A stretch of 63,179 nucleotides of DNA, the filler included, from Octopus bimaculoides (taxonomy: Eukaryota), in assembly GCF_001194135.2 (NCBI RefSeq). It is 6 parts of 6 records of this genome, joined end to end, with 100 filler letters (N's around TTAATTAATTAA, not from the genome) between each part and the next. Parts side by side here need not be neighbours in the genome. Positions count along the whole stretch, not along the records: positions 28,737 to 42,616 come from NC_068990.1; 5 more parts are not named here. The stretch is one strand, 5' to 3'. Every line of letters starts with the position of its first letter. Within the stretch, counting starts at the first letter, position 1. A program made the position numbers and the translations under genes. This document shows positions 28,637-42,616 of the stretch, piece by piece. The notes under the pieces were generated by a model, which did no database searches, was not told the DNA's origin, and worked only from the letters and a program-made list of their open reading frames with translations.

Positions 28637-28769
28637 NNNNNNNNNNNNNNNNNNNNNNNNNNNNNNNNNNNNNNNNNNNNTTAATTAATTAANNNNNNNN
28701 NNNNNNNNNNNNNNNNNNNNNNNNNNNNNNNNNNNNGTGTGTGTATGTATATATTTAGATAGATAGATT

Positions 28770-28802
<33 letters not shown>

Positions 28803-31154
28803 ATAGATAGATGCATACATACATGCATACATACATACATACATAGATACATACATACGTACATACATACATAAATTGTGTTATGCCTTTGTGTTTATCC
28901 CCCATGACACGTGTTGGTGTGTTTATTCTTCGTAATAGTTTGCAAGGTGTTTGGAGTGATTCCGTAATGTATTGATGGTAGACACCTAGATGCTTTGTTC
29001 TCATGTAAGAATGTTTTCATCTCATATTATCGTTATTGCTTAGCTTTGTTTAACCAGAAATGTGATCAAATTTATTCCTGATGTGACAAACCAATATATT
29101 GTAACTTTGAGTATATTATGCTGCGTAACATTCCTTTCTCTAAGACTGTAGTATGTCATTTGAGGAACATTATGTAACTACGTGTAACCATTCTACCAAA
29201 CATGTAAATAATTCTTGACTGGTTTCAATTATTTAGAGTTACAAAATGACGCATGAGAGGAGAAGTTGAAGTCACAATGAAATTATACTGCCATTTTTGC
29301 TTCACTTTGCTATTCACTGTTTTATATCTGTATAATCTTTGAATGCTGAAAGTTCTTCCGTTTACTTCACTTCCCCGAAATTGCTAGCTTTGTGCCAAAC
29401 TTTGATGATATTATTTATTGCATCTCATAATGTTTTGCGATTTAAGTTGGTGCGATACCATATATTTTGGGGTGGTTATAGTTGGTCAAAGTGTCCTAGT
29501 ATATACGCATTACTGCATATCATTGACTCTGGAAAGTTAAAAGGAAAGTTGAGCTTGACTGTAAATGAAACCAAGCTTAGAATGCCGCAACGAAATATTA
29601 GTACATATTTTGCAAATTGTTATACATATTCTTCCGAAGCATTTGGAAAAAATAAAATTGTCAAACATAACGAAAGGCCCAGTAATTTATAGCATCGTCC
29701 TATGTTAGAAACAATCGATGATTATGACGGAGTACTGGAATTGTACACGTCGGTATTTGTGTCCATAACATAAAGATCTGAAACATAACCAGAGGTTTTA
29801 GGCCTGTTCTCTAACGATTCTAGCATTCTACCACCCGGGATAATAACAATATATGTGGTACGTGAAACACTCATTTGTTATATGTGTAACTTCACCGAAG
29901 GATTTTTATTACGATTACACGACATTTGATTCTTGTGTCAGTTCTGACTTGTTTTATCTATTACTTCATCCCGCTTTATGGAAAAACTATTATATGAATA
30001 AGAAATCCGCTTACAAGAAATAAGCCTCTACAGGAGATAACATATATGAACATTTTCACATTATACCTTGCACATCGTGAGGTAAATATTTGTTCATGTG
30101 ATCGATTATAAATACGCTCTGTAGATATTAATATTATTTTAGTTGACCGAATCACCTTACTCAGACAAGAAAATTGAATGTTTCAAAACAGCGTAACGCT
30201 TATCGAACCGTAAATTGTGATGTATTTTGTAATAACTCGGAAATGTTAATGTCATTTATTTATATTACTTCTAAGTTTTCAGACAATACAATGTTGAAGT
30301 ATTTGTATATCTTCATTGGTTGCATTATTGTATTTGTAATATTACACTTGCTTTCAAACTACAGCAGCCATACATTAAAATGATGAGAGGATTGCAGCTT
30401 AAATGTCTTCCTGGCACTTTATAGGATACAAATACCTAGAAGTCGATTATATTTTACAAGCACACCCACTTAATGGATATCCATTTTTTTTACTACTGGT
30501 TTTCGTTCATTTACGTGTGTTTTATTTTTTATTATTCGCTACCAATAGAATTCACTTGGTCACACTTCGGTGCGGACGACGTATAATGACATAAAAGTTT
30601 TCTTTTTGAAGAAATATTTATGATTTCAAAATCGTTTGTTCACAATAAACTTTGGCTCTTTTTTTAAAAAATATATTTCAGAATCCTTTTGATGACACAC
30701 AGCTATCAACCATAATGTATTTGAAGTAATTTAGTTTATTATGCTTTTGTTTATCGTTTTACCAAACATATCCAGCACTTTAAATTTGTCAGTAGTTTAT
30801 TAATGATGCTTTCTAATAACTGTTCACTCTTTTCTAGAAAGATTGAAAGTTTGCCTATGTTTATTTGATGACAACAATGTAGAGAATTACGGACACATGG
30901 TAGACGGATGTACAGAGAATGTGTGATTATTAATTCACAAACGCTTTCATTAATGTAAACAGAAAGCGCTGTTAGATCATTGTACACTGTATTTGAATCT
31001 ACAACAGATGCATTAAATATAATTACTTAAAGGTTCAAACACAGAATCGGCAGACAGATATTTTTCGCACCAAATACTAAAAAGCAAGGAGTAATTCTAA
31101 CTATCCCTCTTACACTCCTGATAAATATAAAACACTTATTTACATATATAGTTA

Positions 31155-31224
31155 AACGCAGACGCGTTTCAGGATTATGATTAATAATTAACAATTAATA
31201 ATCAATTTCCTTCATCAGTACTGT
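31155..31224 (-). ncRNA. Second hammerhead copy: identical core, helix I 3' strand disrupted
   Basis: Identical to the 31713 copy over 83 bp, but after GTC-TGC it reads GTTT instead of TGT, leaving 3 contiguous helix I pairs. Predicted cut between 31161 and 31160. Confidence 0.7.
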
Positions 31225-31798
31225 ATTCCAGTAGTAAATTGCTAGCAAACCCTGCAAGCATGGACTGGTGATTCCACACCGACACAGATCAGAAAGCATA
31301 ACCGAATTCACCTCGGTCAGCTAGTCTAACTGTCCCCTCCTCAAGAAATTACCATGTGCGCGACAAGTGATATCGCAGTGAAATCTGCGTATACTAATCT
31401 GGAGTGAATAATTATTACAAATTAAAAGGGTAAAGGATTATCAATTTATTAATTAATAAATCAATTAATAATTAATAATTTTTACCAAGCCCATCGGTAT
31501 GAAAGCACCATTATTGGTGGAGAACTTATTCAAAAGTTCATATATTTATACATATAATTAAGGGATCAGCAAAATATTTGCTTCACCATATACCGAAGTT
31601 CAGAAAATAGCAGCTAAAAAAGCTGAGAATCTCACAGATAGCATCACTTGTAACTCACAAAGGCAAAAACAAGAAGAAAGAACAATGAAAAACTAACCAA
31701 TTCAGATGATTAACAGCAGACGCGTTTCAGGATTATGATTAATAATTAACAATTAATAATCAATTTCCTTCATCAGTACTGTATTCCAGTAGTAAATT
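31158..31798 (-). mobile_element. Non-coding hammerhead-bounded element (retrozyme-like / Penelope pseudo-LTR derivative)
   Basis: 83-bp perfect direct repeats (31158-31240 and 31716-31798) with a 558-bp period. No ORF of 60 aa or more in the track. No convincing TSD. Confidence 0.7.
31713..31782 (-). ncRNA. Type I hammerhead ribozyme, minimal Penelope-type (intact copy)
   Basis: Minus strand reads ACAGTA-CTGATGA-AGGA(33 nt AT-rich hairpin)TCCT-GAAAC-GC-GTC-TGCTGT. Helix I is ACAGUA/UGCUGU (6 bp, one G-U), core CUGAUGA and GAAA, palindromic ACGCGU helix III, GUC cleavage triplet (cut between 31719 and 31718). Confidence 0.85.
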
Positions 31799-32439
31799 TA
31801 CTCCTTATTTCCTCATCATTTTAAACTTATATTCACTTATTTTCTCTTTAACTACTTGTATAATAACTGTTACGACAAATTTCCTGGAGAAATTATATTT
31901 TTTAAAGAAACGAAGAAAATGGTGTACACTCGAAACTAAATTAACAAATTAAACTACTGTCATGTTTCATTATTGCATAACTTTTGATTTTGCTTATAAA
32001 TGTAAGTTTAAAATTTATTGAAATGCTTCATAGCTATTTCTGTTTATTTATTACGAACTTTCTTATAAGTGGTAGCAAATAAATTGGAATTTATTGCCCA
32101 CAGGATGCTAAACATAGAGGGGATAAACAAGGACAGACAAAGGGATTAAGTCGATTACATCGACTCCAGTGTATAACTGGTACTTATTTAATCGATCCCG
32201 AAAGGATGAAAGGCAAAATCGACCTAGGCGGAATTTGAACTCAGAACGTAACAGCAGACGAAATACCAATTTCTTTATTGCTCACATGGGGCCAAACACA
32301 GAAATGGTCAAAACAACTGATTGGGATCAGTAATACGTTATGATTTTACATAAAATATGAATATAAATATGATATAAAATATAAAAAAATTCGAATGAAA
32401 TTAACAATACAGAGTGAACACAAATGTAGCGATGATCAG

Positions 32440-33060
32440 GCCAAGGTCCGACCCCACAAGCCCCGATCTATCGGTGGTACCTTTTTGATCTTCTTTTGTA
32501 GCCTATTCACACAGTCCCTTGCACGCACAACACACGTGCAACACGATTCCGTCTCTTTTTGAACATGCTCTCCGACAGACACCTCTTTTCCAGCCACACC
32601 TTCCTTTTCAAATGAAAAGTCAAAAATGATCGTTAATCTTGACCGGAGATAAAGTTGCCTGTCTTAATCCCTTTTTATCTTAGTCTTCCATATTGCCTCT
32701 TTCACTATGGCTACAACCGTGAGAAAACAATTCTTACCTTTGTTTGTTAAAACTTCCGGTGAGTCGATTTTTATAATTGACTCAGTCGACAGCCGTACTC
32801 TTCTTTCGCCGGACAACAAGTGTTCAGCATAAACCCAGATTTCAGATATCTCCGGACACAGGACAATAGTGTGAGGGACGGTTTCCTTGACTCTCCCGCA
32901 TCTTAGACACGTCGGAGACTGACGGTAACCATGTCTTGCGAGCTTATCCCAAATGGGCAAGGCACTTCTGTAACATTTCCAGGTCAATGACTTTGGGAAG
33001 TTGTCCAACGTTCTCAACCCGAATGTACGATGGAACAGGCTATATACCACTATAAATGAC
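32440..33060 (-). mobile_element. L1/Tx1-clade LINE 3' fragment (zf-RVT)
   Basis: WKCYRSALP...CLRCGRVKETVPHTIVLCP..IW, matching the CxxC-ETxxH-C zinc knuckle of L1/Tx1 ORF2. Confidence 0.8.
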
Positions 33061-36000
33061 TGGGAGCTACTAATCTCTCTGATGTCTAAACTTTTCCCAA
33101 TGAATGCATAGAAAGAAAAGAAACTAGTTGAATTGATCGCATATTTTTCTTTTTTATAGCGGAACTAAAATCTTATGTCTATTAAAAGCTATGTCCTACT
33201 TTACTGACTCTGTTCAGTGAATAACTGGAAATGATTTACAGTTCCTGGTTAGAATTTACCTCGATATCATTTCAAATCAGTCTTGACAGTGCAGTAACTA
33301 GGTACTATACTACATTTAGTCTGTCATTATATAATCCGACCCATTTCCACGATCACACTGTTCTTTATTATTCATGTAATCAATGCCTATAGAAACAATA
33401 GAATGGCGTAGTTACTTTCAGAGAAGCATCTAAATTTTAACATACTTCTAATTAATTCCTCGTCTATAAAAATGTATTAGTTACGCTTTGGAAACCATTC
33501 CGTTAATCTGATTCTTCATTAACTCAACGATATATTAACGTTATTCCAATGTGCAACATAAATGTGGTTTTCTTATAGAAACACTAGTCATGAAATCTAG
33601 AAACTAAGTGTAGTTACTTAGATCAACCCTAGTATTCAACTAACACTAGTTTAGTGGCCATGTGTGTATGAAAGGTAAATTCTACCTAGCCGAGAATTGA
33701 ACTGAAGACATGAATGTAGTTATATAATGTTTTTGCAAGACATTTTCTTCTGCTCTATTGATGGTAGTAATTTAAATAAAAAAAAAACAATTGTATAACA
33801 TAAATATCAAATGAAAACCTTACGAAATATGAAGAAAATTGTAGTTTACAATCCGACACACGACAGGAAATATTTGAAATAAATTGTGACAATCTTTCTT
33901 CCTTAGAGAAAGATACAGCAGATATTTATCATAAATACGTAGTGCAAATGAAGTGTATTTTTTTATTCAAACAACTCTAATATATAATTGCTATTACTTT
34001 ATTAGCCACAAAAGGAAATAAATGGTGACACAAATGCATGTTCCTATAAATATTTATCCTTTACACAGCCTACATATCACTGATTTATGGGAGCGGCGCA
34101 ATCTGCATCTAGATATTTTTAACGCAAATAAATTTCTTTTAGAGATTTACAACGTATATTTGTCATATATTAGTAATATGGGAAGTGATGCAATTTACAA
34201 ACAACCCCAGGGAAACATGGATAATTAAATACGTTTCCATTGAACAGTAAACCAAACTAAAATTCTAATTTATAAATTGGTTTCTCATTGCTACGATGTA
34301 TTGCAATTTCCTTGATTACAACACAAACAAACACCTATCTTATTAATGCGTGGTTTCCTTGTTGAAACATTCCCGTTATGTGTCAGAATTTTAATATTTA
34401 CTGTCTTCCCCGTCTTCTCGTTCCCATTTACTTTATTCAAATAATTCAATTATTGCCACAATGAATCAGTTTACTCAATATTCCAAGTCATTTCATAATG
34501 TCAGCGTCTCTTTGTTGAGTCTCCAATCTAAACATGTTCCGCCCATCTAGCAGCTATATCAATTAATCGTACCAGATTGTTTCTGTTAGTTTGCACACGC
34601 GCACATATGTCCAGTATATTCAGCTTGAAAAATGAAGTCCATATATTGATATTATCATCCCTGAATTTATACAGGAAAAATTAATTCTCCAGCTCCAGCA
34701 TCCATAGAAAGAGGGAACTAAATTTCTGGTAATCTACATGCCACCTCCCGTTTAGATTTAATTTCCAAGTATGTTTACTTGTTCTATACTAATAATCTTT
34801 CCTCTTGTCGAAAAATTGAAGCGCTTCTCTACTTATAAACACAAAATGCTACTGGGCAAAATATTCAACAGCATAATATAAATAATATATGAGTTTGATT
34901 TCTGGATTATTTAGTTTAGTGTTACGCAGAAATATCATGAGTTAAATTATAACGCCTCCTCTACAGCACTATAGTCATGCCATTTGTATATATATNNNNN
35001 NNNNNNNNNNNNNNNNNNNNNNNNNNNNNNNNNNNNNNNNNNNNNNNNNNNNNNNNNNNNNNNNNNNNNNNNNNNNNNNNNNNNNNNNNNNNATATATAT
35101 ATATATATACCTATAGATACGTAACATAAATAAATTGATGAATAAATAGATATATAAATTATTTATATATATGCATGTATGTGTGTGTGCGTGTTGTCAA
35201 TAAAACTAGAGAAAACCATATGTAATTGGGCTACTCAGAATTTTCTGGACAGAATATTACAATATATTTCGTAATTTTTCAAGCTGCTAATGTCAATATG
35301 GTAGGTTAACCACTCTGTATGAGTTATATAATATTTACATTAGAGCACGTGGTGTGGAAATAAATTTAATAATCCGGCCAAGAAAACCTGTGTAACTGGA
35401 TTTCACGTGGTCTTTGTGTGGTTCTTGGAAAGCACGGAAGAACCTACTATGAAAGACGTGATTTCGGTTGCAATATTGTCACCGTTCCATAGACTTCTAT
35501 AATCTATTTCTAAAATACTGAAGAATGTTAAAAATTTATGATCTTGAGTCACCATTCCAAGCGGCTGAACCTTTCGGGGATTACACATCATTCCTTCAAT
35601 ATGAAGTGTGGAAGATCCGCAAAATATGAAGAGCAAGTTTCAAATTGTTTCCTAGCATATACTAACACCTATCATTTCATTTGAAAAGTCAATATTGCCT
35701 TCAACTTCATGAAGTTTGATAAAATAAGTACCAGTGAAATACTGGTTGATATTAATCAGCTATTAATTTCGACACTGTGCGTAGCATTCTCAGTAATCTA
35801 TATTTCTGTATTATACTTCAGAGCTAGTTGTTGCGATAATACGATGCAACACTGAGTGCTTTATCTTAAAGCTATTATTTATTCACTCCAAATTTTGAAT
35901 CCAGCAATGTTTCATTCAGAGACTTTATGAATCATTGTTGCTAATCTGAACATATTCCACAGAATTAGTCCTTTGTAGCGCGAACGTTTAACGCGCACAC

Positions 36001-36061
36001 ATGCATAAATGCATACATACGTATATACATACATACATGCGTACGTACATACATGCATATA

Positions 36062-37165: not shown

Positions 37166-37616
37166 TGCGTGGCACCTTGGGCAAGTGTCTTCTACTATAA
37201 CCTCGGGCCGACCAAAGCTTTGTGAGTGGATTTGGTAGACGGAAACTGAAAGAAGCCTGTCGTATATATGTTTATATATATATATATANNNNNNNNNNNN
37301 NNNNNNNNNNNNNNNNNNNNNNNNNNNNNNNNNNNNNNNNNNNNNNNNNNNNNNNNNNNNNNNNNNNNNNNNNNNNNNNNNNNNNNNNNNNNNNNNNNNN
37401 NNNNNNNNNNNNNNNNNNNNNNNNNNNNNNNNNNNNNNNNNNNNNNNNNNNNNNNNGAGCAAATCGTCCCCGTAACTTAGCGGTTCGGCAAAAGAGACCG
37501 ATAGAATTAGTACTAGGCTTACAAAGAATAAGTCCTGGGGTCGATTTGCTCGACTAAAGGCGGTGCTCCAGCATAGCCACAGTCAAATGACTGAAACAAG
37601 TAAAAGAGTAAAAGAG
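37166..37616 (+). mobile_element. CORE-like SINE family B copy, split by gap
   Basis: GGCACCTTGGGCAAGTGTCTTCTACTATA...GACTGAAACAAGTAAAAGAGTAAAAGAG. CpGs retained. Confidence 0.85.
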
Positions 37617-39160
37617 ATTTTAAGAATATATGTCTTAACCACAAATATTTCGTGCATATTTGTTTATCTTTATGGGGTCTATTCTTGTCATAAAAATCAA
37701 ATTGCGATGAAAAATGTTTTATTCTCGTGAGATGGACAGTAACCAACAGGACAGTAACCAAAAAGTTAAGAAGTGTGCGTGTCTAGATGGAATTTCGATG
37801 GCAGTTGATGAGCTGATAATTCTTGCCGAAGACTCCTGCATTAAAAATTAAAACCAAAAAATTATGATTCATATAATTATCTGTTACAGTAAATTTTTCT
37901 TTTCTATTAATATTGTCTATGTGCAGAGTTTGATAATTTCGGGTCGTAGCCTTTTTATCGATTTATCGATTTCAGTCATTGGAATGCTGCCATACAGGGT
38001 TACCGCCTGGAAGGGTTTAATCAAAGTAATCGATGTTAGGACTTATTTTTAAGATTGAAACTTATAAAAATATACACGCACACACAAAGCGCACCCAATA
38101 TAGATACATAAACACTGAAAATATACAGGCACACCTGTATGCATGTACCACACATGTCTGATAGCCTCTTACACATACGCAAACATGCGACAGTCATTTA
38201 CACATGCATACATAATCAGGAAATAAGTATACACAAGCATGTACACACACATGTTAAACGCACACCGTATATAAGCATATACGCACATAATCGCTTAATT
38301 CACACTTGCAATTGTAAATACACACGCGCGTGACAGCCTCATGCACATATATCAAATAAATTCACACCCACGCACGCACATAAACACGTACACACATGTA
38401 CAAATACACAGAGTATATACGCACTCGCGTGCTTTTATGCACCCGCGAACACATGCACACACACATACATACACACAAACATGCATGTGCAAGTACGAAC
38501 GCATGCTCGTCCATACATATATTCACGTGCACCCATTGACTCATATACACACGTGCTTTCGCTCATAGGCTAAACCACTGTTGTCTCCCTTGCCACTCAC
38601 ACCACAAGTAATATTCATTTGCTTCCTTTCATTTCAGCATAACTTGACCATTAAATTTACACCTGTTTCTCGTGCAAATCATATCGTTTGTATTAAATTC
38701 CATCTGTTGTATTTTAGTGAAACAGTGTGTGTGTGTGTGTGCATGTATGTATGTATGTATGTATGTGTGTGTGGGTGGGTGTATACATGCAAAAACTGCA
38801 CTTGAATGGTGAATGTTAAATCCATTATTATTCTTCACCAACGTTCCACGTCTTTCATGATTGACTCATGTTCATGCACACATGCAATACACACTCATGG
38901 ACACACACATACAAACACATACTCTGACACAAACAGCACAGATGTATGCAAATATGCATGTGTATACTCATGTACCTACGTATGTATGATTGTATATATA
39001 TATATATATATATAGATATAGATAGATAGATAGATACATGGATAGATAGATATAATGGGGGAGAATTACTATTTATTAAAATGCTAATATATGCGCATGC
39101 GTACTTCTGTGCTCGGTGTGTGTGTGCATGACTATACACTCTGTATTGCACGTGTAAGTG

Positions 39161-39371
39161 TTTTCTGCTCTAGGCACAAGGCCCGAAATTTTTGGAGAGA
39201 GGACCAGTCGATGAGATCGATCCCAATACTCAACTGGTACTTAATTTATCGACTCCGAAAGGATGAAAGGCAAAGTCGACCTCGGCGGAATTTGAACTCA
39301 GAACGTAGCGGCAGACGAAATACCGCTAAGCATTTCGCCCGGCGTGCTAACGTTTCTGCCATCTCGCTGCT
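39161..39371 (-). mobile_element. tRNA-derived SINE family A, well-preserved copy
   Basis: Box-B-like GAGTTCAAATTCC and shared body GTCGAC..TGCCTTTCATCCTTTCGG..GTCGAT..AAGTACCAGTTGAG. Related copies at ~12770-12920, 16030-16200, 20440-20620, 21500-21850, 23580-24000, 32090-32310, 35690-35760, 45490-45590, 46400-46500 and 51228-51313. Confidence 0.85.
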
Positions 39372-40442
39372 TAGTGTAAGACTGGGGCTGTGATATGTAT
39401 ATGTTTAACTATGTAAGTACGAAAGAATATATATTTAATCTGTATTTAATATGTGGACAACTAATCTGAAACGTCTGCCATCCTATACACGATTGTCGAA
39501 TTGCTATAATATTTAGTGGAGCGTTGTCAAATAAGAAGCAAATGAATAACATATNNNNNNNNNNNNNNNNNNNNNNNNNNNNNNNNNNNNNNNNNNNNNN
39601 NNNNNNNNNNNNNNNNNNNNNNNNNNNNNNNNNNNNNNNNNNNNNNNNNNNNNNNNNNNNNNNNNNNNNNNNNNNNNNNNNNNNNNNNNNNNNNNNNNNN
39701 NNNNNNNNNNNNNNNNNNNNNNNNNNNNNNNNNNNNNNNNNNNNNNNNNNNNNNNNNNNNNNNNNNNNNNNNNNNNNNNNNNNNNNNNNNNNNNNNNNNN
39801 NNNNNNNNNNNNNNNNNNNNNNNNNNNNNNNNNNNNNNNNNNNNNNNNNNNNNNNNNNNNNNNNNNNNNNNNNNNNNNNNNNNNNNNNNNNNNNNNNNNN
39901 NNNNNNNNNNNNNNNNNNNNNNNNNNNNNNNNNNNNNNNNNNNNNNNNNNNNNNNNNNNNNNNNNNNNNNNNNNNNNNNNNNNNNNNNNNNNNNNNNNNN
40001 NNNNNNNNNNNNNNNNNNNNNNNNNNNNNNNNNNNNNNNNNNNNNNNNNNNNNNNNNNNNNNNNNNNNGAGAGAAAGGGAAAGGCAGAGAGAAAGATCGC
40101 AACTGAGGTTTCAGCCCGTTTCTTTCTCTCTCGCTGTGTCTTTCTATATATATATATATGCTTATACAAGCAGACAATTATATGGAATGAGACAAAATGA
40201 TCCACATATAAAAACCGCATAAATTTACACTTTCATACATACATACATACATACATACATACATGCATACATACATGCATACATATATACATACGTACAT
40301 ATGTACATACATATGTACACATATATACAAACAGACTAACGCACAGAGAAGCATTCTCATCCGCATATATCTACAGGTACATATAATCACACATATAAAC
40401 ATATATATATGATATAACATACATACCTACATACATACATAC

Positions 40443-40481
<39 letters not shown>

Positions 40482-41145
40482 NNNNNNNNNNNNNNNNNNN
40501 NNNNNNNNNNNNNNNNNNNNNNNNNNNNNNNNNNNNNNNNNNNNNNNNNNNNNNNNNNNNNNNNNNNNNNNNNNNNNNNNNNNNNNNNNNNNNNNNNNNN
40601 NNNNNNNNNNNNNNNNNNATATACACACACAAACACATATATGAAGACAAACCAGTGGTGTATATGTATACCATAAGAGGATTACAAAGACTGAATGACG
40701 GCAGAGAATGAAGATTACGAAATATCCGTTGTCAAAGTTCAGTAGAATCTACGGATTATGTAGTTAATACGGCTTTCATTGTTGTATACTAAACAAACAG
40801 CTAGGCAAGATGTCATGAATTAATGTCACACTCGGACTACTGGTGCCGGACACGAACGTCGATTTATAGCACCATGCGAACGTGTAATATTATTGCAAAG
40901 AGTTTGTCTTTCCTAGATACTGGGTTTCGAATTGAGCAGGGATTTTATTTCATGTATTACGTATTTATGCGGCTGATGGTTCTTTGTAAATCAGTTTTAT
41001 CATAGATCTTGAATATGTATCAATGGCTGTTATTCTGATCGGCCAAGGAATGTTTCAATCTTTCCCGCAGCTTAGCACGGTCAGTATACGAAAAAGTGCA
41101 CCAAGCGAATTCCTATTTCAGTGATGATATCTATCTATCTATCTA

Positions 41146-41201
<56 letters not shown>

Positions 41202-42290
41202 NNNNNNNNNNNNNNNNNNNNNNNNNNNNNNNNNNNNNNNNNNNNNNNNNNNNNNNNNNNNNNNNNNNNNNNNNNNNNNNNNNNNNNNNNNNNNNNNNNN
41301 NNNNNNNNNNNNNNNNNNNNNNNNNNNNNNNNNNNNNNNNNNNNNNNNNNNNNNNNNNNNNNNNNNNNNNNNNNNNNNNNNNNNNNNNNNNNNNNNNNNN
41401 NNNNNNNNNNNNNNNNNNNNNNNNNNNNNNNNNNNNNNNNNNNNNNNNNNNNNNNNNNNNNNNNNNNNNNNNNNNNNNNNNNNNNNNNNNNNNNNNNNNN
41501 NNNNNNNNNNNNNNNNNNNNNNNNNNNNNNNNNNNNNNNNNNNNNNNNNNNNNNNNNNNNNNNNNNNNNNNNNNNNNNNNNNNNNNNNNNNNNNNNNNNN
41601 NNNNNNNNNNNNNNNNNNNNNNNNNNNNNNNNNNNNNNNNNNNNNNNNNNNNNNNNNNNNNNNNNNNNNNNNNNNNNNNNNNNNNNNNNNNNNNNNNNNN
41701 NNNNNNNNNNNNNNNNNNNNNNNNNNNNNNNNNNNNNNNNNNNNNNNNNNNNNNNNNNNNNNNNNNNNNNNNNNNNNNNNNNNNNNNNNNNNNNNNNNNN
41801 TATATATATATCAGCAAGACCACAGCTTTAGGGCTGAAACGTATAAAAGAATAAAACAATATATCAATATCTATACGTACGCACACACACAAATACACAC
41901 ACACATACACGCGCACAAGCGTATATATGTATATATGTATATATGTATATACATATCTCCCTGTGTCTGTATACACACACACACGCATACACACACATAC
42001 ACTTATATATACGAAGAAAGTGGGAGAGATACATAGATAAATAGACAGATATTTGAACGCATAAATGTTTTATAAACTTTCAAGTGAAAGTGATATTATT
42101 CATATTTTGAACATCGTCTCTTGAGGCACTTCGCATATACATAATAGCATGTAAATAATTGATTGAATTAAAAAAATAATTCTCTTCCAAATGATTTTTT
42201 TTCGGCCTAATATTCGTATTCTATTATTCATAGATTTTTTGATATGCCTCAAGAGCCAATATTTTCATATTTGTCCCCCGCCACAAACAT

Positions 42291-42327
<37 letters not shown>

Positions 42328-42356
42328 TACATATGTATACATACCCCCCACATATA

Positions 42357-42556
42357 CTCTTTTACTCTCTTTTTACTCTTTTAGTTGTTTCAGTCATTTG
42401 ACTACGGCCATGCAAATCGACCCCAGGACTTATTCTTTGTAAGCCTAGTATTTACTTATTCTATAGGTCTCTTTGGCCGAACCGCTAAGTTACAGAGACG
42501 TAAACACACCAACATCGGTTGTCAGGCGATGTTGGGGGGCACAAACAGACACACAC
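42357..42556 (-). mobile_element. SINE family B 3' half with an internal deletion
   Basis: Reverse complement of the 37460-37616 segment, lacking the TGGAGCACCGCCTTTAGTCGAGC stretch. Confidence 0.8.
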
Positions 42557-42557
42557 G

Positions 42558-42616
<59 letters not shown>

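What the first reader, a model, noticed from the sequence alone, without database searches (positions are those of the whole stretch)
31158..31798. Hammerhead-bounded 558-nt non-coding unit: candidate retrozyme / circular-RNA-derived mobile element
Seen: two identical 83-bp direct repeats, each with a complete hammerhead core on the minus strand; cleavage sites 558 nt apart; no ORF. Homology between the repeats stops 3 nt past the GUC of the downstream copy, and about 80 extra nt of the monomer 3' end precede the full monomer. Known: Penelope-like elements carry minimal hammerheads in their pseudo-LTRs, and metazoan non-LTR retrozymes are tandem hammerhead repeats processed into small circular RNAs. 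Inference: the RNA 3' end was set by self-cleavage, and reverse transcription ran about 1.14 times around a circle or jumped template. Ligating the monomer ends would restore an intact helix I (ACAGUA/UGCUGU). This would be a non-autonomous ribozyme element mobilised in trans, possibly by Penelope machinery such as the GIY-YIG element at 62.5 kb. I cannot tell whether the family is already catalogued in cephalopods.
Basis: partly seen in the sequence, partly recalled or inferred. Interest (0 to 1): 0.85.

Follow-up and report, generated by a model that had tools for sequence, protein, structure and literature searches.

The report
Hammerhead-ribozyme retrozyme copy in octopus DNA
This is one genomic copy of a small non-coding mobile element that carries a self-cleaving hammerhead ribozyme motif and folds into a very stable RNA, a kind already known from many animals but which I could not find described for cephalopods.

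Summary
Two identical 83-bp direct repeats (31158-31240 and 31716-31798) each carry a full hammerhead core on the minus strand. The predicted cleavage sites are 558 nt apart, and there is no ORF. A hammerhead descriptor matches about 0.0005 times per shuffled 12.4 kb.

New evidence: the 558-nt unit folds unusually well in the hammerhead polarity (z = -7.1). The complement gives z = -3.8 and flanking controls about 0. The fold has 25 G-U pairs against 2 A-C oppositions, which points to an RNA-level structure. Helix III is a minimal palindrome (ACGCGU), and energy models favour the dimeric (double-hammerhead) form.

No reverse transcriptase or GIY-YIG domain lies inside or nearby, so this is not the pseudo-LTR of a coding Penelope-like element.

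The best reading is a 1.15-unit insertion of a metazoan non-LTR retrozyme, in an octopus-like genome.

Caveats:
- No Rfam hammerhead model matches.
- Pair 10.1-11.1 is A-U, not the usual G-C.
- The downstream ribozyme keeps only 3 bp of helix I.
- No second copy could be retrieved, so family status, covariation, cleavage, circularisation and Penelope dependence are untested.
- The repeat runs 3 nt past the cleavage site, which argues against a cleaved linear monomer as template.

Verdict: a new member of a known kind.

The parts
31158..31798 (-). Whole insertion as recognisable: 641 bp = 80 nt of unit 3' end + one full 558-nt unit + 3 nt (UGC), about 1.15 units
   Evidence: Repeat alignment in register
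31161..31718 (-). 558-nt unit between the two predicted cleavage sites (RNA 5'-UGCUGUUAAUC...GAAACGCGUC-3'); GC 33.9%, non-coding
   Evidence: Linear MFE -164.4 kcal/mol, z = -7.08. Circular MFE -158.9 kcal/mol, 67% of bases paired
31713..31782 (-). Hammerhead A, complete. Helix I 5' strand ACAGUA 31782..31777; CUGAUGA 31776..31770; helix II 31769..31729; GAAA 31728..31725; CGCG 31724..31721; U16.1 31720; C17 31719; cleavage between 31719 and 31718; helix I 3' strand UGCUGU 31718..31713
   Evidence: Read from the sequence. It is the only full descriptor match in the piece, with 0.0005 expected per shuffle
31158..31224 (-). Hammerhead B, with the same core (CUGAUGA 31218..31212; C17 31161). Only 3 nt (UGC, 31160..31158) of the helix I 3' strand remain before the flank
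   Evidence: fails the helix I criterion
31716..31798 (-). Upstream 83-bp terminal repeat (pseudo-LTR-like), holding hammerhead A
   Evidence: 83/83 identity with 31158-31240
31158..31240 (-). Downstream 83-bp terminal repeat, holding hammerhead B
   Evidence: 83/83 identity with 31716-31798
31317..31700 (-). Long-range paired domain of the unit RNA (unit positions 19-402), including a 14-bp helix with 6 G-U pairs
   Evidence: Helix list of the circular MFE structure; 25 G-U pairs against 2 A-C oppositions
31434..31476 (-). Internal AU-rich hairpin that is a diverged copy of the hammerhead helix II hairpin, ending in the same AUAAUCCU; it forms the tip of the paired domain
   Evidence: Local alignment score 45 against shuffle mean 25.6, sd 4.4; direct-repeat families D2/D3
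31152..31157 (.). Candidate target-site duplication, left copy (TTAAAC), abutting the element
   Evidence: post hoc p about 0.015; weak
31821..31826 (.). Candidate target-site duplication, right copy (TTAAAC), 22 nt beyond the repeat; 31799-31820 would then be a 5' 'tail'
   Evidence: weak. The tail's similarity to the hammerhead is not significant

Best explanation
The locus is a retro-inserted copy of a non-autonomous, non-coding hammerhead element of the metazoan non-LTR retrozyme type, sitting in an octopus-like genome.

Proposed mechanism:
1. Source copies, arranged as tandems or multimers, are transcribed on the strand that is the minus strand here.
2. Two hammerhead domains pair through the palindromic helix III (ACGCGU) to form a double hammerhead, which cuts after GUC.
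3. [quoted passage not shown]
4. A host RtcB-type ligase closes this RNA into a circle.
5. The circle settles into a very stable, highly paired fold that sequesters the ribozyme core.
6. A reverse transcriptase supplied in trans copies the circle, or an uncleaved multimer, for a little more than one turn. Penelope-like elements are the candidate named in the literature.
7. This leaves the 83-bp terminal redundancy that contains the ribozyme.

Shown here: the motif, the repeat geometry, the absence of coding capacity, the polarity-specific RNA structure, the energetic preference for the dimeric ribozyme, and the absence of a Penelope ORF.

Inferred only: transcription, cleavage, ligation, the identity of the reverse transcriptase, and mobility.

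This particular copy is probably a product rather than a source, because its downstream ribozyme keeps only 3 bp of helix I.
For: Motif: the hammerhead core is complete, with a GUC triplet, a 6-bp helix I and a 4-bp helix II. That is the geometry given for canonical metazoan type I hammerheads in PMC4209133 (sequence). A match is expected 0.0005 times per shuffled 12.4 kb.

Helix III: it is 1-2 bp with a palindromic loop. The monomeric catalytic fold scores -8.7 kcal/mol against an MFE of -15.9. The double hammerhead scores -36.9 against -31.8 for two separate monomers. This fits the dimer-dependent class.

RNA structure: the unit RNA has z = -7.08 in the hammerhead polarity, -3.84 in the complement, and 0.11 and -0.31 in two flanking controls. 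It has 25 G-U pairs against 3 in the complement's fold. Only 2 A-C oppositions occur in symmetric loops.

Other retrozyme features: GC is 33.9%. There is no ORF, linear or circular. There is no PBS, PPT or TG..CA terminus (read).

Not a coding Penelope element: no RT or GIY-YIG domain within about 2-3 kb on either side.

Architecture: the terminal redundancy contains the ribozyme, as in Penelope pseudo-LTRs.

Size and arrangement: the 558-nt unit falls within the 51-972 bp range of retrozyme consensus lengths, and solo monomers are reported as common.

Host: the genome is octopus-like. Octopus vulgaris has 31 recently active Penelope-like families.

Age: the two 83-bp repeats are identical, which fits a young insertion. 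This is inference.
Against: - No Rfam hammerhead model matches, at E <= 10 on 13.9 kb, 751 nt or 101 nt.
- Pair 10.1-11.1 is A-U, whereas G-C is described as highly conserved. The ribozyme may be weak or dead.
- Only one locus is known. There is no other copy in the 13.9-kb piece and none in 62 kb of Octopus bimaculoides sequence. Nothing came from the protein-word trick. The DNA pattern scans gave nothing in the viral collection and only two chance hits in bacterial coding sequence. Multi-copy status and covariation are therefore unproven.
- The locus has 1.15 units rather than a tandem of at least 2.
- Hammerhead B has only 3 bp of helix I.
- There is no clear target-site duplication. One 6-bp candidate has a post hoc p of about 0.015.
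Confidence: 0.75

Rival explanations
1. It is an internally deleted Penelope-like element (a 'mini-PLE'): two pseudo-LTRs with their hammerheads, and 475 bp left over from untranslated regions after the RT/GIY-YIG ORF was lost. It would not belong to a separate retrozyme lineage. The mechanism would be the same, with mobilisation in trans by the parent PLE family.
For: The architecture is pseudo-LTR(hammerhead) - internal part - pseudo-LTR(hammerhead), as in PLEs. A 2026 preprint argues that animal retrozymes derive from PLE pseudo-LTRs. PLEs are recently active in Octopus vulgaris.
Against: No remnant of RT or GIY-YIG is detectable inside or nearby. The internal 475 nt forms a strongly selected-looking RNA fold, which is not expected of leftover UTR. 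No octopus PLE sequence was available for comparison. The boundary between this reading and the best explanation is largely one of naming.
Confidence: 0.12
2. It is a local DNA-level event that happens to contain a hammerhead-like string. Candidates are a partial tandem duplication or the remnant of a satellite array. No RNA intermediate would be involved.
For: Only one locus is known. Rfam models do not call a hammerhead. There is no convincing target-site duplication. At about 0.0005 matches per 12.4 kb, I estimate on the order of a hundred chance descriptor matches in a genome of a few Gb (extrapolated; the genome size is assumed, not measured).
Against: The chance motif would also have to lie inside the 83-bp redundancy, with the repeat ending 3 nt from the cleavage site. 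It would further have to sit in a unit whose RNA of the same polarity folds at z = -7.1, with 25 G-U pairs against 2 A-C oppositions. A DNA palindrome decaying neutrally should show no such strand bias.
Confidence: 0.06
3. It is a DNA copy of an RNA-replicating, viroid-like or satellite-like circular RNA (a 'retroviroid-like' element) captured by a cellular reverse transcriptase. It would not be a genome-resident retrotransposon family.
For: The unit is a 558-nt, non-coding, highly paired RNA with a hammerhead. The insert is longer than one unit, as expected from a circular template.
Against: A ribozyme is present in one polarity only. No ribozyme family matches the complement. Symmetric rolling-circle replicons carry one in each polarity. 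The composition, at 34% GC, matches the host flanks at 32-34%. Type I hammerheads with a minimal helix III are typical of animal genomic elements.
Confidence: 0.04
4. The 83-bp repeat encodes a C/D-box snoRNA-like RNA: UGAUGA as the C box, CUGA as the D box, and ACAGUA/UGCUGU as the terminal stem.
For: There are weak cmscan alignments to snoU18, DdR17 and snoR23 on the same stretch.
Against: Scores are 15-17 bits against gathering thresholds of 47-80. Eight nucleotides separate the CUGA from the terminal stem, which breaks the kink-turn geometry. Every hammerhead core position is present instead.
Confidence: 0.01

Closest known systems
Metazoan non-LTR retrozymes (Cervera and de la Pena 2020, PMC7229834; review PMC7761336; Li, Clavereau and Pollet 2026 preprint, doi 10.64898/2026.07.22.740005)
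   Same: Both have a type I hammerhead with a weak palindromic helix III. Both are non-coding, low in GC and lack LTR, PBS and PPT. Both give a highly self-paired unit RNA and show head-to-tail redundancy. The proposed life cycle also matches: self-cleavage, ligation to a circle, then reverse transcription for more than one unit.
   Different: The unit is 558 nt, against about 170-400 nt in the 2020 paper, although it lies inside the 51-972 bp range of the 2026 preprint. Only 1.15 units are present here, rather than dimers or multimers. Pair 10.1-11.1 is A-U. Helix II carries a 33-nt extension. No cephalopod example turned up in my searches of the held library. Copy number and RNA expression are unknown.
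Penelope-like elements with minimal hammerheads in their pseudo-LTRs (Cervera and de la Pena 2014, PMC4209133; Craig et al. 2021, PMC8557442)
   Same: The direct terminal repeats carry a hammerhead near the 3' end. Both show partial-tandem insertion architecture, and both have a dimer-type helix III.
   Different: There is no RT or GIY-YIG ORF. [quoted passage not shown] Here helix I is 6 bp and helix II closes with 4 bp, as in 'canonical' metazoan type I hammerheads.
Newt/salamander satellite 2 and axolotl retrozyme hammerheads
   Same: Helix III is reduced to 1-2 bp with a palindromic loop, so efficient cleavage is expected only as a double hammerhead. The energy model here agrees.
   Different: The hosts are vertebrates, the units are 330-350 nt and the arrays reach tens of thousands of tandem copies. 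There is no sequence similarity to this element.
Plant LTR retrozymes (PMC4918200)
   Same: Both are non-autonomous hammerhead elements of about 600-1000 nt that give circular RNAs. Both have terminal repeats that hold the ribozymes.
   Different: The plant elements have type III hammerheads, true LTRs, a tRNA-Met PBS, a PPT, 4-bp TSDs and GC above 55%. None of these is seen here.

Membership tests
Hammerhead ribozyme, type I | Conserved core C3-U4-G5-A6-N7-G8-A9 ... G12-A13-A14 ... A15.1-U16.1, with H17 at the cleavage site | tested here: met
   CUGAUGA ... GAAA ... (A)CGCG(U)C in both copies
Hammerhead ribozyme, type I | Three helices around the core, open at helix I; the canonical metazoan geometry is helix I 6 bp and helix II 4 bp | tested here: met
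   In copy A, ACAGUA/UGCUGU gives 6 bp (one G-U) and AGGA/UCCU gives 4 bp. A match is expected 0.0005 times per shuffle. Copy B has only 3 bp of helix I
Hammerhead ribozyme, type I | G10.1-C11.1 pair closing helix II (described as highly conserved) | tested here: not met
   The pair is A10.1-U11.1 (sequence); conservation is stated in PMC4209133
Hammerhead ribozyme, type I | Match to the curated covariance models (Rfam Hammerhead_1 and related models) | tested here: not met
   No hammerhead match at E <= 10 on 13.9 kb, 751 nt or 101 nt. I suspect the 33-nt helix II insertion, the 2-nt loop 3 and the A-U at 10.1-11.1 are the reasons, but I did not test this
Hammerhead ribozyme, type I | Covariation supporting the helices across homologues | not testable with these tools
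   No homologue was retrieved; the two copies are identical
Hammerhead ribozyme, type I | Site-specific self-cleavage | not testable with these tools
   Needs in vitro transcription of monomeric and dimeric constructs
Metazoan non-LTR retrozyme | Type I hammerheads in direct head-to-tail repeats of a short non-coding unit | tested here: inconclusive
   There are two cores 558 nt apart and no ORF. Only 1.15 units are present and the second hammerhead lacks most of helix I
Metazoan non-LTR retrozyme | Low GC (below 45-50%) and no LTR, PBS or PPT | tested here: met
   GC is 33.9%. There is no TGG-type PBS after the 5' repeat, no purine tract before the 3' repeat and no TG..CA termini (read)
Metazoan non-LTR retrozyme | Unit RNA predicted to be stable and highly self-paired | tested here: met
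   z = -7.08, with controls about 0; 67% of bases paired in the circle
Metazoan non-LTR retrozyme | Multiple dispersed or tandem genomic copies (a repeat family) | not testable with these tools
   No eukaryotic genome collection can be searched by DNA. There is no copy in the piece or in L003
Metazoan non-LTR retrozyme | Expression as linear and circular RNA of unit length | not testable with these tools
   Needs RNA-seq, northern blots or RNase R treatment
Metazoan non-LTR retrozyme | Co-occurrence with autonomous Penelope-like elements in the host genome | not tested
   Literature only: 31 recently active PLE families in Octopus vulgaris (PMC13282606). There is no PLE in the piece
Penelope-like element (autonomous) | Single ORF with RT and GIY-YIG endonuclease between the pseudo-LTRs | tested here: not met
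   The 475 nt between the repeats have 11-19 stops per frame; no Pfam RT or GIY-YIG hit in 28880-34995
Plant-type LTR retrozyme / TRIM | Type III hammerhead, LTRs with PBS and PPT, 4-bp TSD | tested here: not met
   The hammerhead is type I; there is no PBS, PPT or 4-bp TSD
C/D-box snoRNA | Match to a snoRNA model at its gathering score; C and D boxes adjacent to a terminal stem | tested here: not met
   Scores are 15-17 bits against thresholds of 47-80

The most novel reading that the evidence does not exclude
The insert may not be a Penelope-dependent retrozyme. It could instead be the DNA footprint of an autonomously RNA-replicating, viroid-like circular RNA of an octopus (an animal 'retroviroid'), captured once by a cellular reverse transcriptase.

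A milder version also remains open. The 3-9 nt that run across the cleavage site, together with the TTAA microhomology at the 3' junction, could be a direct genomic fossil showing that the reverse-transcription template was the ligated circle.
Probability: 0.05. Interest if true: 0.8.

Novelty: new member of a known kind. Interest (0 to 1): 0.35.

Why it matters
Retrozymes are the only known route by which animal genomes make abundant circular RNAs without the spliceosome. How they are mobilised is still a hypothesis. A young, sharply bounded 1.15-unit insertion shows the junctions of one integration event. Here the copy runs across the cleavage and ligation site, which favours a circular or multimeric template over a cleaved linear one. 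If the family proves multi-copy in octopus, it would add cephalopods to the retrozyme hosts. That is a lineage with recently active Penelope-like elements and heavy RNA biology, and with a large unclassified repeat fraction. It would also supply a hammerhead variant that current Rfam models miss: A10.1-U11.1 with a long helix II. None of this would overturn current views.

Tried and rejected
1. Rfam/Infernal at three scales gave no hammerhead. The many mir-297/mir-466 matches in the piece are (TATG/TACA)n microsatellites.
2. I tried to find other copies through spurious ORFs. A concatenate of all stop-free translations of the element found nothing among 5.8 billion proteins.
3. The neighbouring zf-RVT ORF found nothing by word search or by exact look-up.
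4. The hammerhead pattern CTGATGAAGG-N20-50-CCTGAAACGCGTC gave 0 hits in viral contigs. It gave one hit each in metagenome and GTDB contigs, both in GC-rich bacterial coding sequence and both chance.
5. The 76-kb Octopus bimaculoides locus L003 has no copy of the element and no hammerhead-like motif.
6. Target-site duplication: only a non-adjacent TTAAAC candidate, with post hoc p about 0.015.
7. The 22-nt 'tail' resembles the hammerhead box (TGATGA-GGAAAT), but not significantly (p = 0.08-0.13). I dropped it.
8. The idea that the 558-nt unit is a diverged dimer of a unit of about 279 nt failed. Only the helix II hairpin is duplicated, and the halves are otherwise unrelated.
9. I looked for a shared tail between the element and the LINE 3' region. 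Self-BLAST found no similarity.
10. ARAGORN found no tRNA in the piece.
11. One number, the energy of the mirrored structure on the complement, is not meaningful because it scores non-standard pairs. I did not use it.
Full report
**1. What is in the sequence**

Positions 31158-31240 and 31716-31798 are identical over 83 bp, at an offset of 558. BLAST stretches the match to 89 bp because the next six bases match 4 of 6: TTAA-AC against TTAA-CA.

On the minus strand each copy reads AAUUUACUACUGGAAU-ACAGUA-CUGAUGA-AGGA[33 nt]UCCU-GAAA-CGCG-UC. This maps onto the hammerhead as follows:
- CUGAUGA is the core, C3 to A9.
- Helix II closes with AGGA/UCCU and extends into an interrupted AU-rich hairpin.
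- GAAA is G12 to A15.1.
- Helix III is reduced to A15.1-U16.1 plus C-G around a 2-nt loop, so the stretch ACGCGU is a palindrome.
- The cleavage triplet is GUC.

C17 is at 31719 in the upstream copy (A) and 31161 in the downstream copy (B), so the predicted cleavage sites are 558 nt apart. After copy A comes UGCUGU, which pairs with ACAGUA to give a 6-bp helix I with one G-U pair. After copy B only UGC is shared, and then the flank begins.

In RNA orientation the locus is therefore 80 nt of unit 3' end, one full 558-nt unit, and 3 nt. That is 641 bp, or 1.15 units.

**2. Is the motif more than chance?**

I wrote a descriptor in the style used for hammerhead searches. It requires the core boxes, helix II of at least 4 bp, a palindromic helix III, H17 and helix I of at least 5 bp. 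It matches only copy A in the 13.9-kb piece. It matches 0.0005 times per shuffled 12.4 kb on both strands, over 4000 shuffles. Copy B fails only on helix I.

Against this, Infernal with all 4227 Rfam 15 models reports no hammerhead family. This held at E <= 1 on the whole piece, at E <= 10 on 751 nt and at E <= 10 on 101 nt. The only alignments on the stretch are sub-threshold C/D-box snoRNA models (15-17 bits against 47-80). They pick up UGAUGA and CUGA.

The motif departs from the consensus in three ways that probably explain the miss, although I could not test this:
- a 33-nt extension of helix II;
- a 2-nt loop 3;
- A10.1-U11.1 where G-C is described as highly conserved (PMC4209133).

**3. 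The unit is a structured RNA in the ribozyme's polarity**

This is the main new evidence.
- The 558-nt RNA of the hammerhead polarity folds at -164.4 kcal/mol, against -119.8 +/- 6.3 for dinucleotide shuffles, giving z = -7.08.
- The complement gives z = -3.84.
- Two 558-nt flanking controls give z = 0.11 and -0.31.
- As a circle the unit folds at -158.9 kcal/mol, with 67% of bases paired.
- Unit positions 19-402 form a long interrupted helix with side hairpins.
- The fold contains 25 G-U pairs, against 3 in the best fold of the complement.
- Only 2 A-C oppositions occur in symmetric internal loops, a rough binomial p of 6e-6. This count is biased by the folding algorithm and by the 39% U content.

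A DNA palindrome decaying neutrally should show no such strand bias. The structure therefore looks selected at the RNA level, on the same strand as the ribozyme. In this stable fold the helix I strands and part of the core are paired elsewhere. The ribozyme would be off in the mature molecule, as described for viroids and retrozymes.

**4. Monomer or dimer ribozyme**

- For an 83-nt domain, the catalytic fold with a 1-bp helix III scores -8.7 kcal/mol against an MFE of -15.9.
- A double hammerhead is one in which the two ACGCGU stretches form a 6-bp intermolecular helix III and the helix I strands are swapped. It scores -36.9 kcal/mol, against -31.8 for two separate monomers and -40.3 for the unconstrained dimer.
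- This is the behaviour reported for newt and axolotl hammerheads and for Penelope hammerheads, which cleave efficiently only as dimers.
- At this locus, site A could be cut by a double hammerhead formed with B. Site B has only a 3-bp helix I, and the A&B double hammerhead scores -31.9.

This copy is therefore more likely a product than a productive source.

**5. What it is not**

- There is no coding capacity. The longest stop-free stretch is 44 codons. On the circle every frame has 11-19 stops.
- There is no RT, GIY-YIG or other Pfam domain in any stop-free segment of at least 48 codons between 28880 and 34995. The one exception is a zf-RVT match (PF13966, E = 2.6e-9) at 32664-33050 on the minus strand.
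- That match is the C-terminal end of a LINE-type reverse transcriptase. It lies 865 nt away and is separated from the element by a SINE.
- LTR-retrozyme or TRIM features are absent: no PBS, PPT, TG..CA termini or 4-bp TSD.

**6. Junctions and mechanism**

The repeat runs 3 nt (UGC) past the cleavage site. The next six bases match 4 of 6, and the shared TTAA abuts the flank.

A self-cleaved linear monomer ends at GUC with a cyclic phosphate and has nothing beyond it. The template of this copy therefore carried sequence across the site, so it was a ligated circle or an uncleaved multimer.

One reading of the TTAA is microhomology between the nicked target (TTAAAC) and the RNA (UGUUAA). That is inference from a single junction.

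A candidate 6-bp target-site duplication exists. TTAAAC at 31152-31157 abuts the element and recurs at 31821-31826. That would leave a 22-nt tail at the 5' end, and such tails are described for Penelope-like insertions. The post hoc probability is about 0.015, so I treat it as weak.

The two 83-bp repeats have no differences. By the logic used for LTRs, this suggests a young insertion. That is inference, and gene conversion cannot be excluded.

**7. Host and relatives**

- Peptides translated from the SINE next to the element match only Octopus bimaculoides proteins.
- The piece shares interspersed repeats at 85-97% identity with a 76-kb O. bimaculoides chromosome locus, L003.
- I could not obtain any other copy of the element. 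There is none in the piece and none in L003. Nothing came from the protein database using translated fragments. Scans of the viral, metagenome and prokaryote collections gave nothing in the viral contigs and two chance hits in bacterial genes.

**8. Comparison with what is known**

Metazoan non-LTR retrozymes are defined by these features:
- type I hammerheads in head-to-tail repeats of a short non-coding unit;
- low GC, and no LTR, PBS or PPT;
- abundant, highly self-paired circular RNAs;
- probable mobilisation by Penelope-like elements.

Sources are PMC7229834 and PMC7761336. A 2026 preprint reports consensus lengths of 51-972 bp and frequent solo monomers, and relates the elements to Penelope pseudo-LTRs.

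The present locus meets every feature I could test. The exceptions are that it has 1.15 units rather than two or more, and that family-level properties are untestable here.

It works like a retrozyme. Membership of the kind is likely but not proven.

The papers I searched for retrozymes or hammerheads in cephalopods contain very little:
- a count of 235 Rfam Hammerhead_1 hits in the giant squid genome (PMC6962438);
- no mention of hammerheads or retrozymes in a detailed 2026 repeat annotation of Octopus vulgaris, which does report 31 recently active Penelope-like families (PMC13282606).

**9. Verdict**

The best explanation is a recent 1.15-unit insertion of a non-LTR retrozyme with a dimer-type, somewhat atypical hammerhead (confidence about 0.75). 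It is a new member of a known kind. Interest is moderate to low (0.35). The finding fits the existing picture. It offers a clean junction and a hammerhead variant that Rfam misses, but it rests on one locus.

Noticed in passing
window 32090-32300 (-) and 39155-39370 (+): Two copies of a tRNA-related SINE-like repeat, about 86% identical to each other. It has many copies in the O. bimaculoides locus L003 at 78-94% identity. Its translated fragments are embedded in three annotated O. bimaculoides proteins. ARAGORN calls no tRNA in it.
   Followed up: partly
window 32664-33164 (-): A 5'-truncated LINE-type reverse transcriptase C-terminus (zf-RVT, PF13966, E = 2.6e-9). It is in the same orientation as the element and 865 nt upstream of it in RNA sense. 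It found no relatives in the protein database by word search.
   Followed up: partly
window 37166-37288, 37465-37633, 42350-42500: Further interspersed repeat families shared with O. bimaculoides L003 at up to 96.7% and 92% identity. 37465-37633 and 42350-42500 are inverted copies of one family, about 76% identical.
   Followed up: no
window 28740-28880, 35990-36060, 38400-39050, 40215-40480, 41885-42010, 42280-42616: (TATG/TACA)n-type microsatellites give dozens of sub-threshold matches to mir-297, mir-466, mir-3149 and mir-1277 models. These are low-complexity artefacts, not miRNA genes.
   Followed up: yes
window 34996-35092, 37289-37456, 39555-40068, 40482-40618, 41202-41800: Five runs of N (1515 bases in all) inside the piece. 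Each is bordered by TA/CA-rich simple repeats, so they are probably assembly gaps in microsatellites.
   Followed up: no
window 31434-31476 (-): The AU-rich helix II hairpin of the hammerhead has a diverged second copy about half a unit away, at the tip of the paired domain. It ends in the same AUAAUCCU but has no core boxes. The rest of the two half-units is unrelated.
   Followed up: yes
window 31722-31779 (-): The hammerhead core mimics C/D-box snoRNA signatures (UGAUGA ... CUGA) well enough to draw weak cmscan alignments. This could be a source of false snoRNA calls in genomes rich in such elements.
   Followed up: yes
L001 3119-3169 (+); L002 1831-1896 (-): The 23-base hammerhead pattern hit one soil-metagenome contig and one Thiobacillaceae MAG contig. 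In both cases the hit lies inside GC-rich protein-coding sequence. These are chance matches, at the rate I estimated beforehand from pattern length (about one per 10^12 positions).
   Followed up: yes
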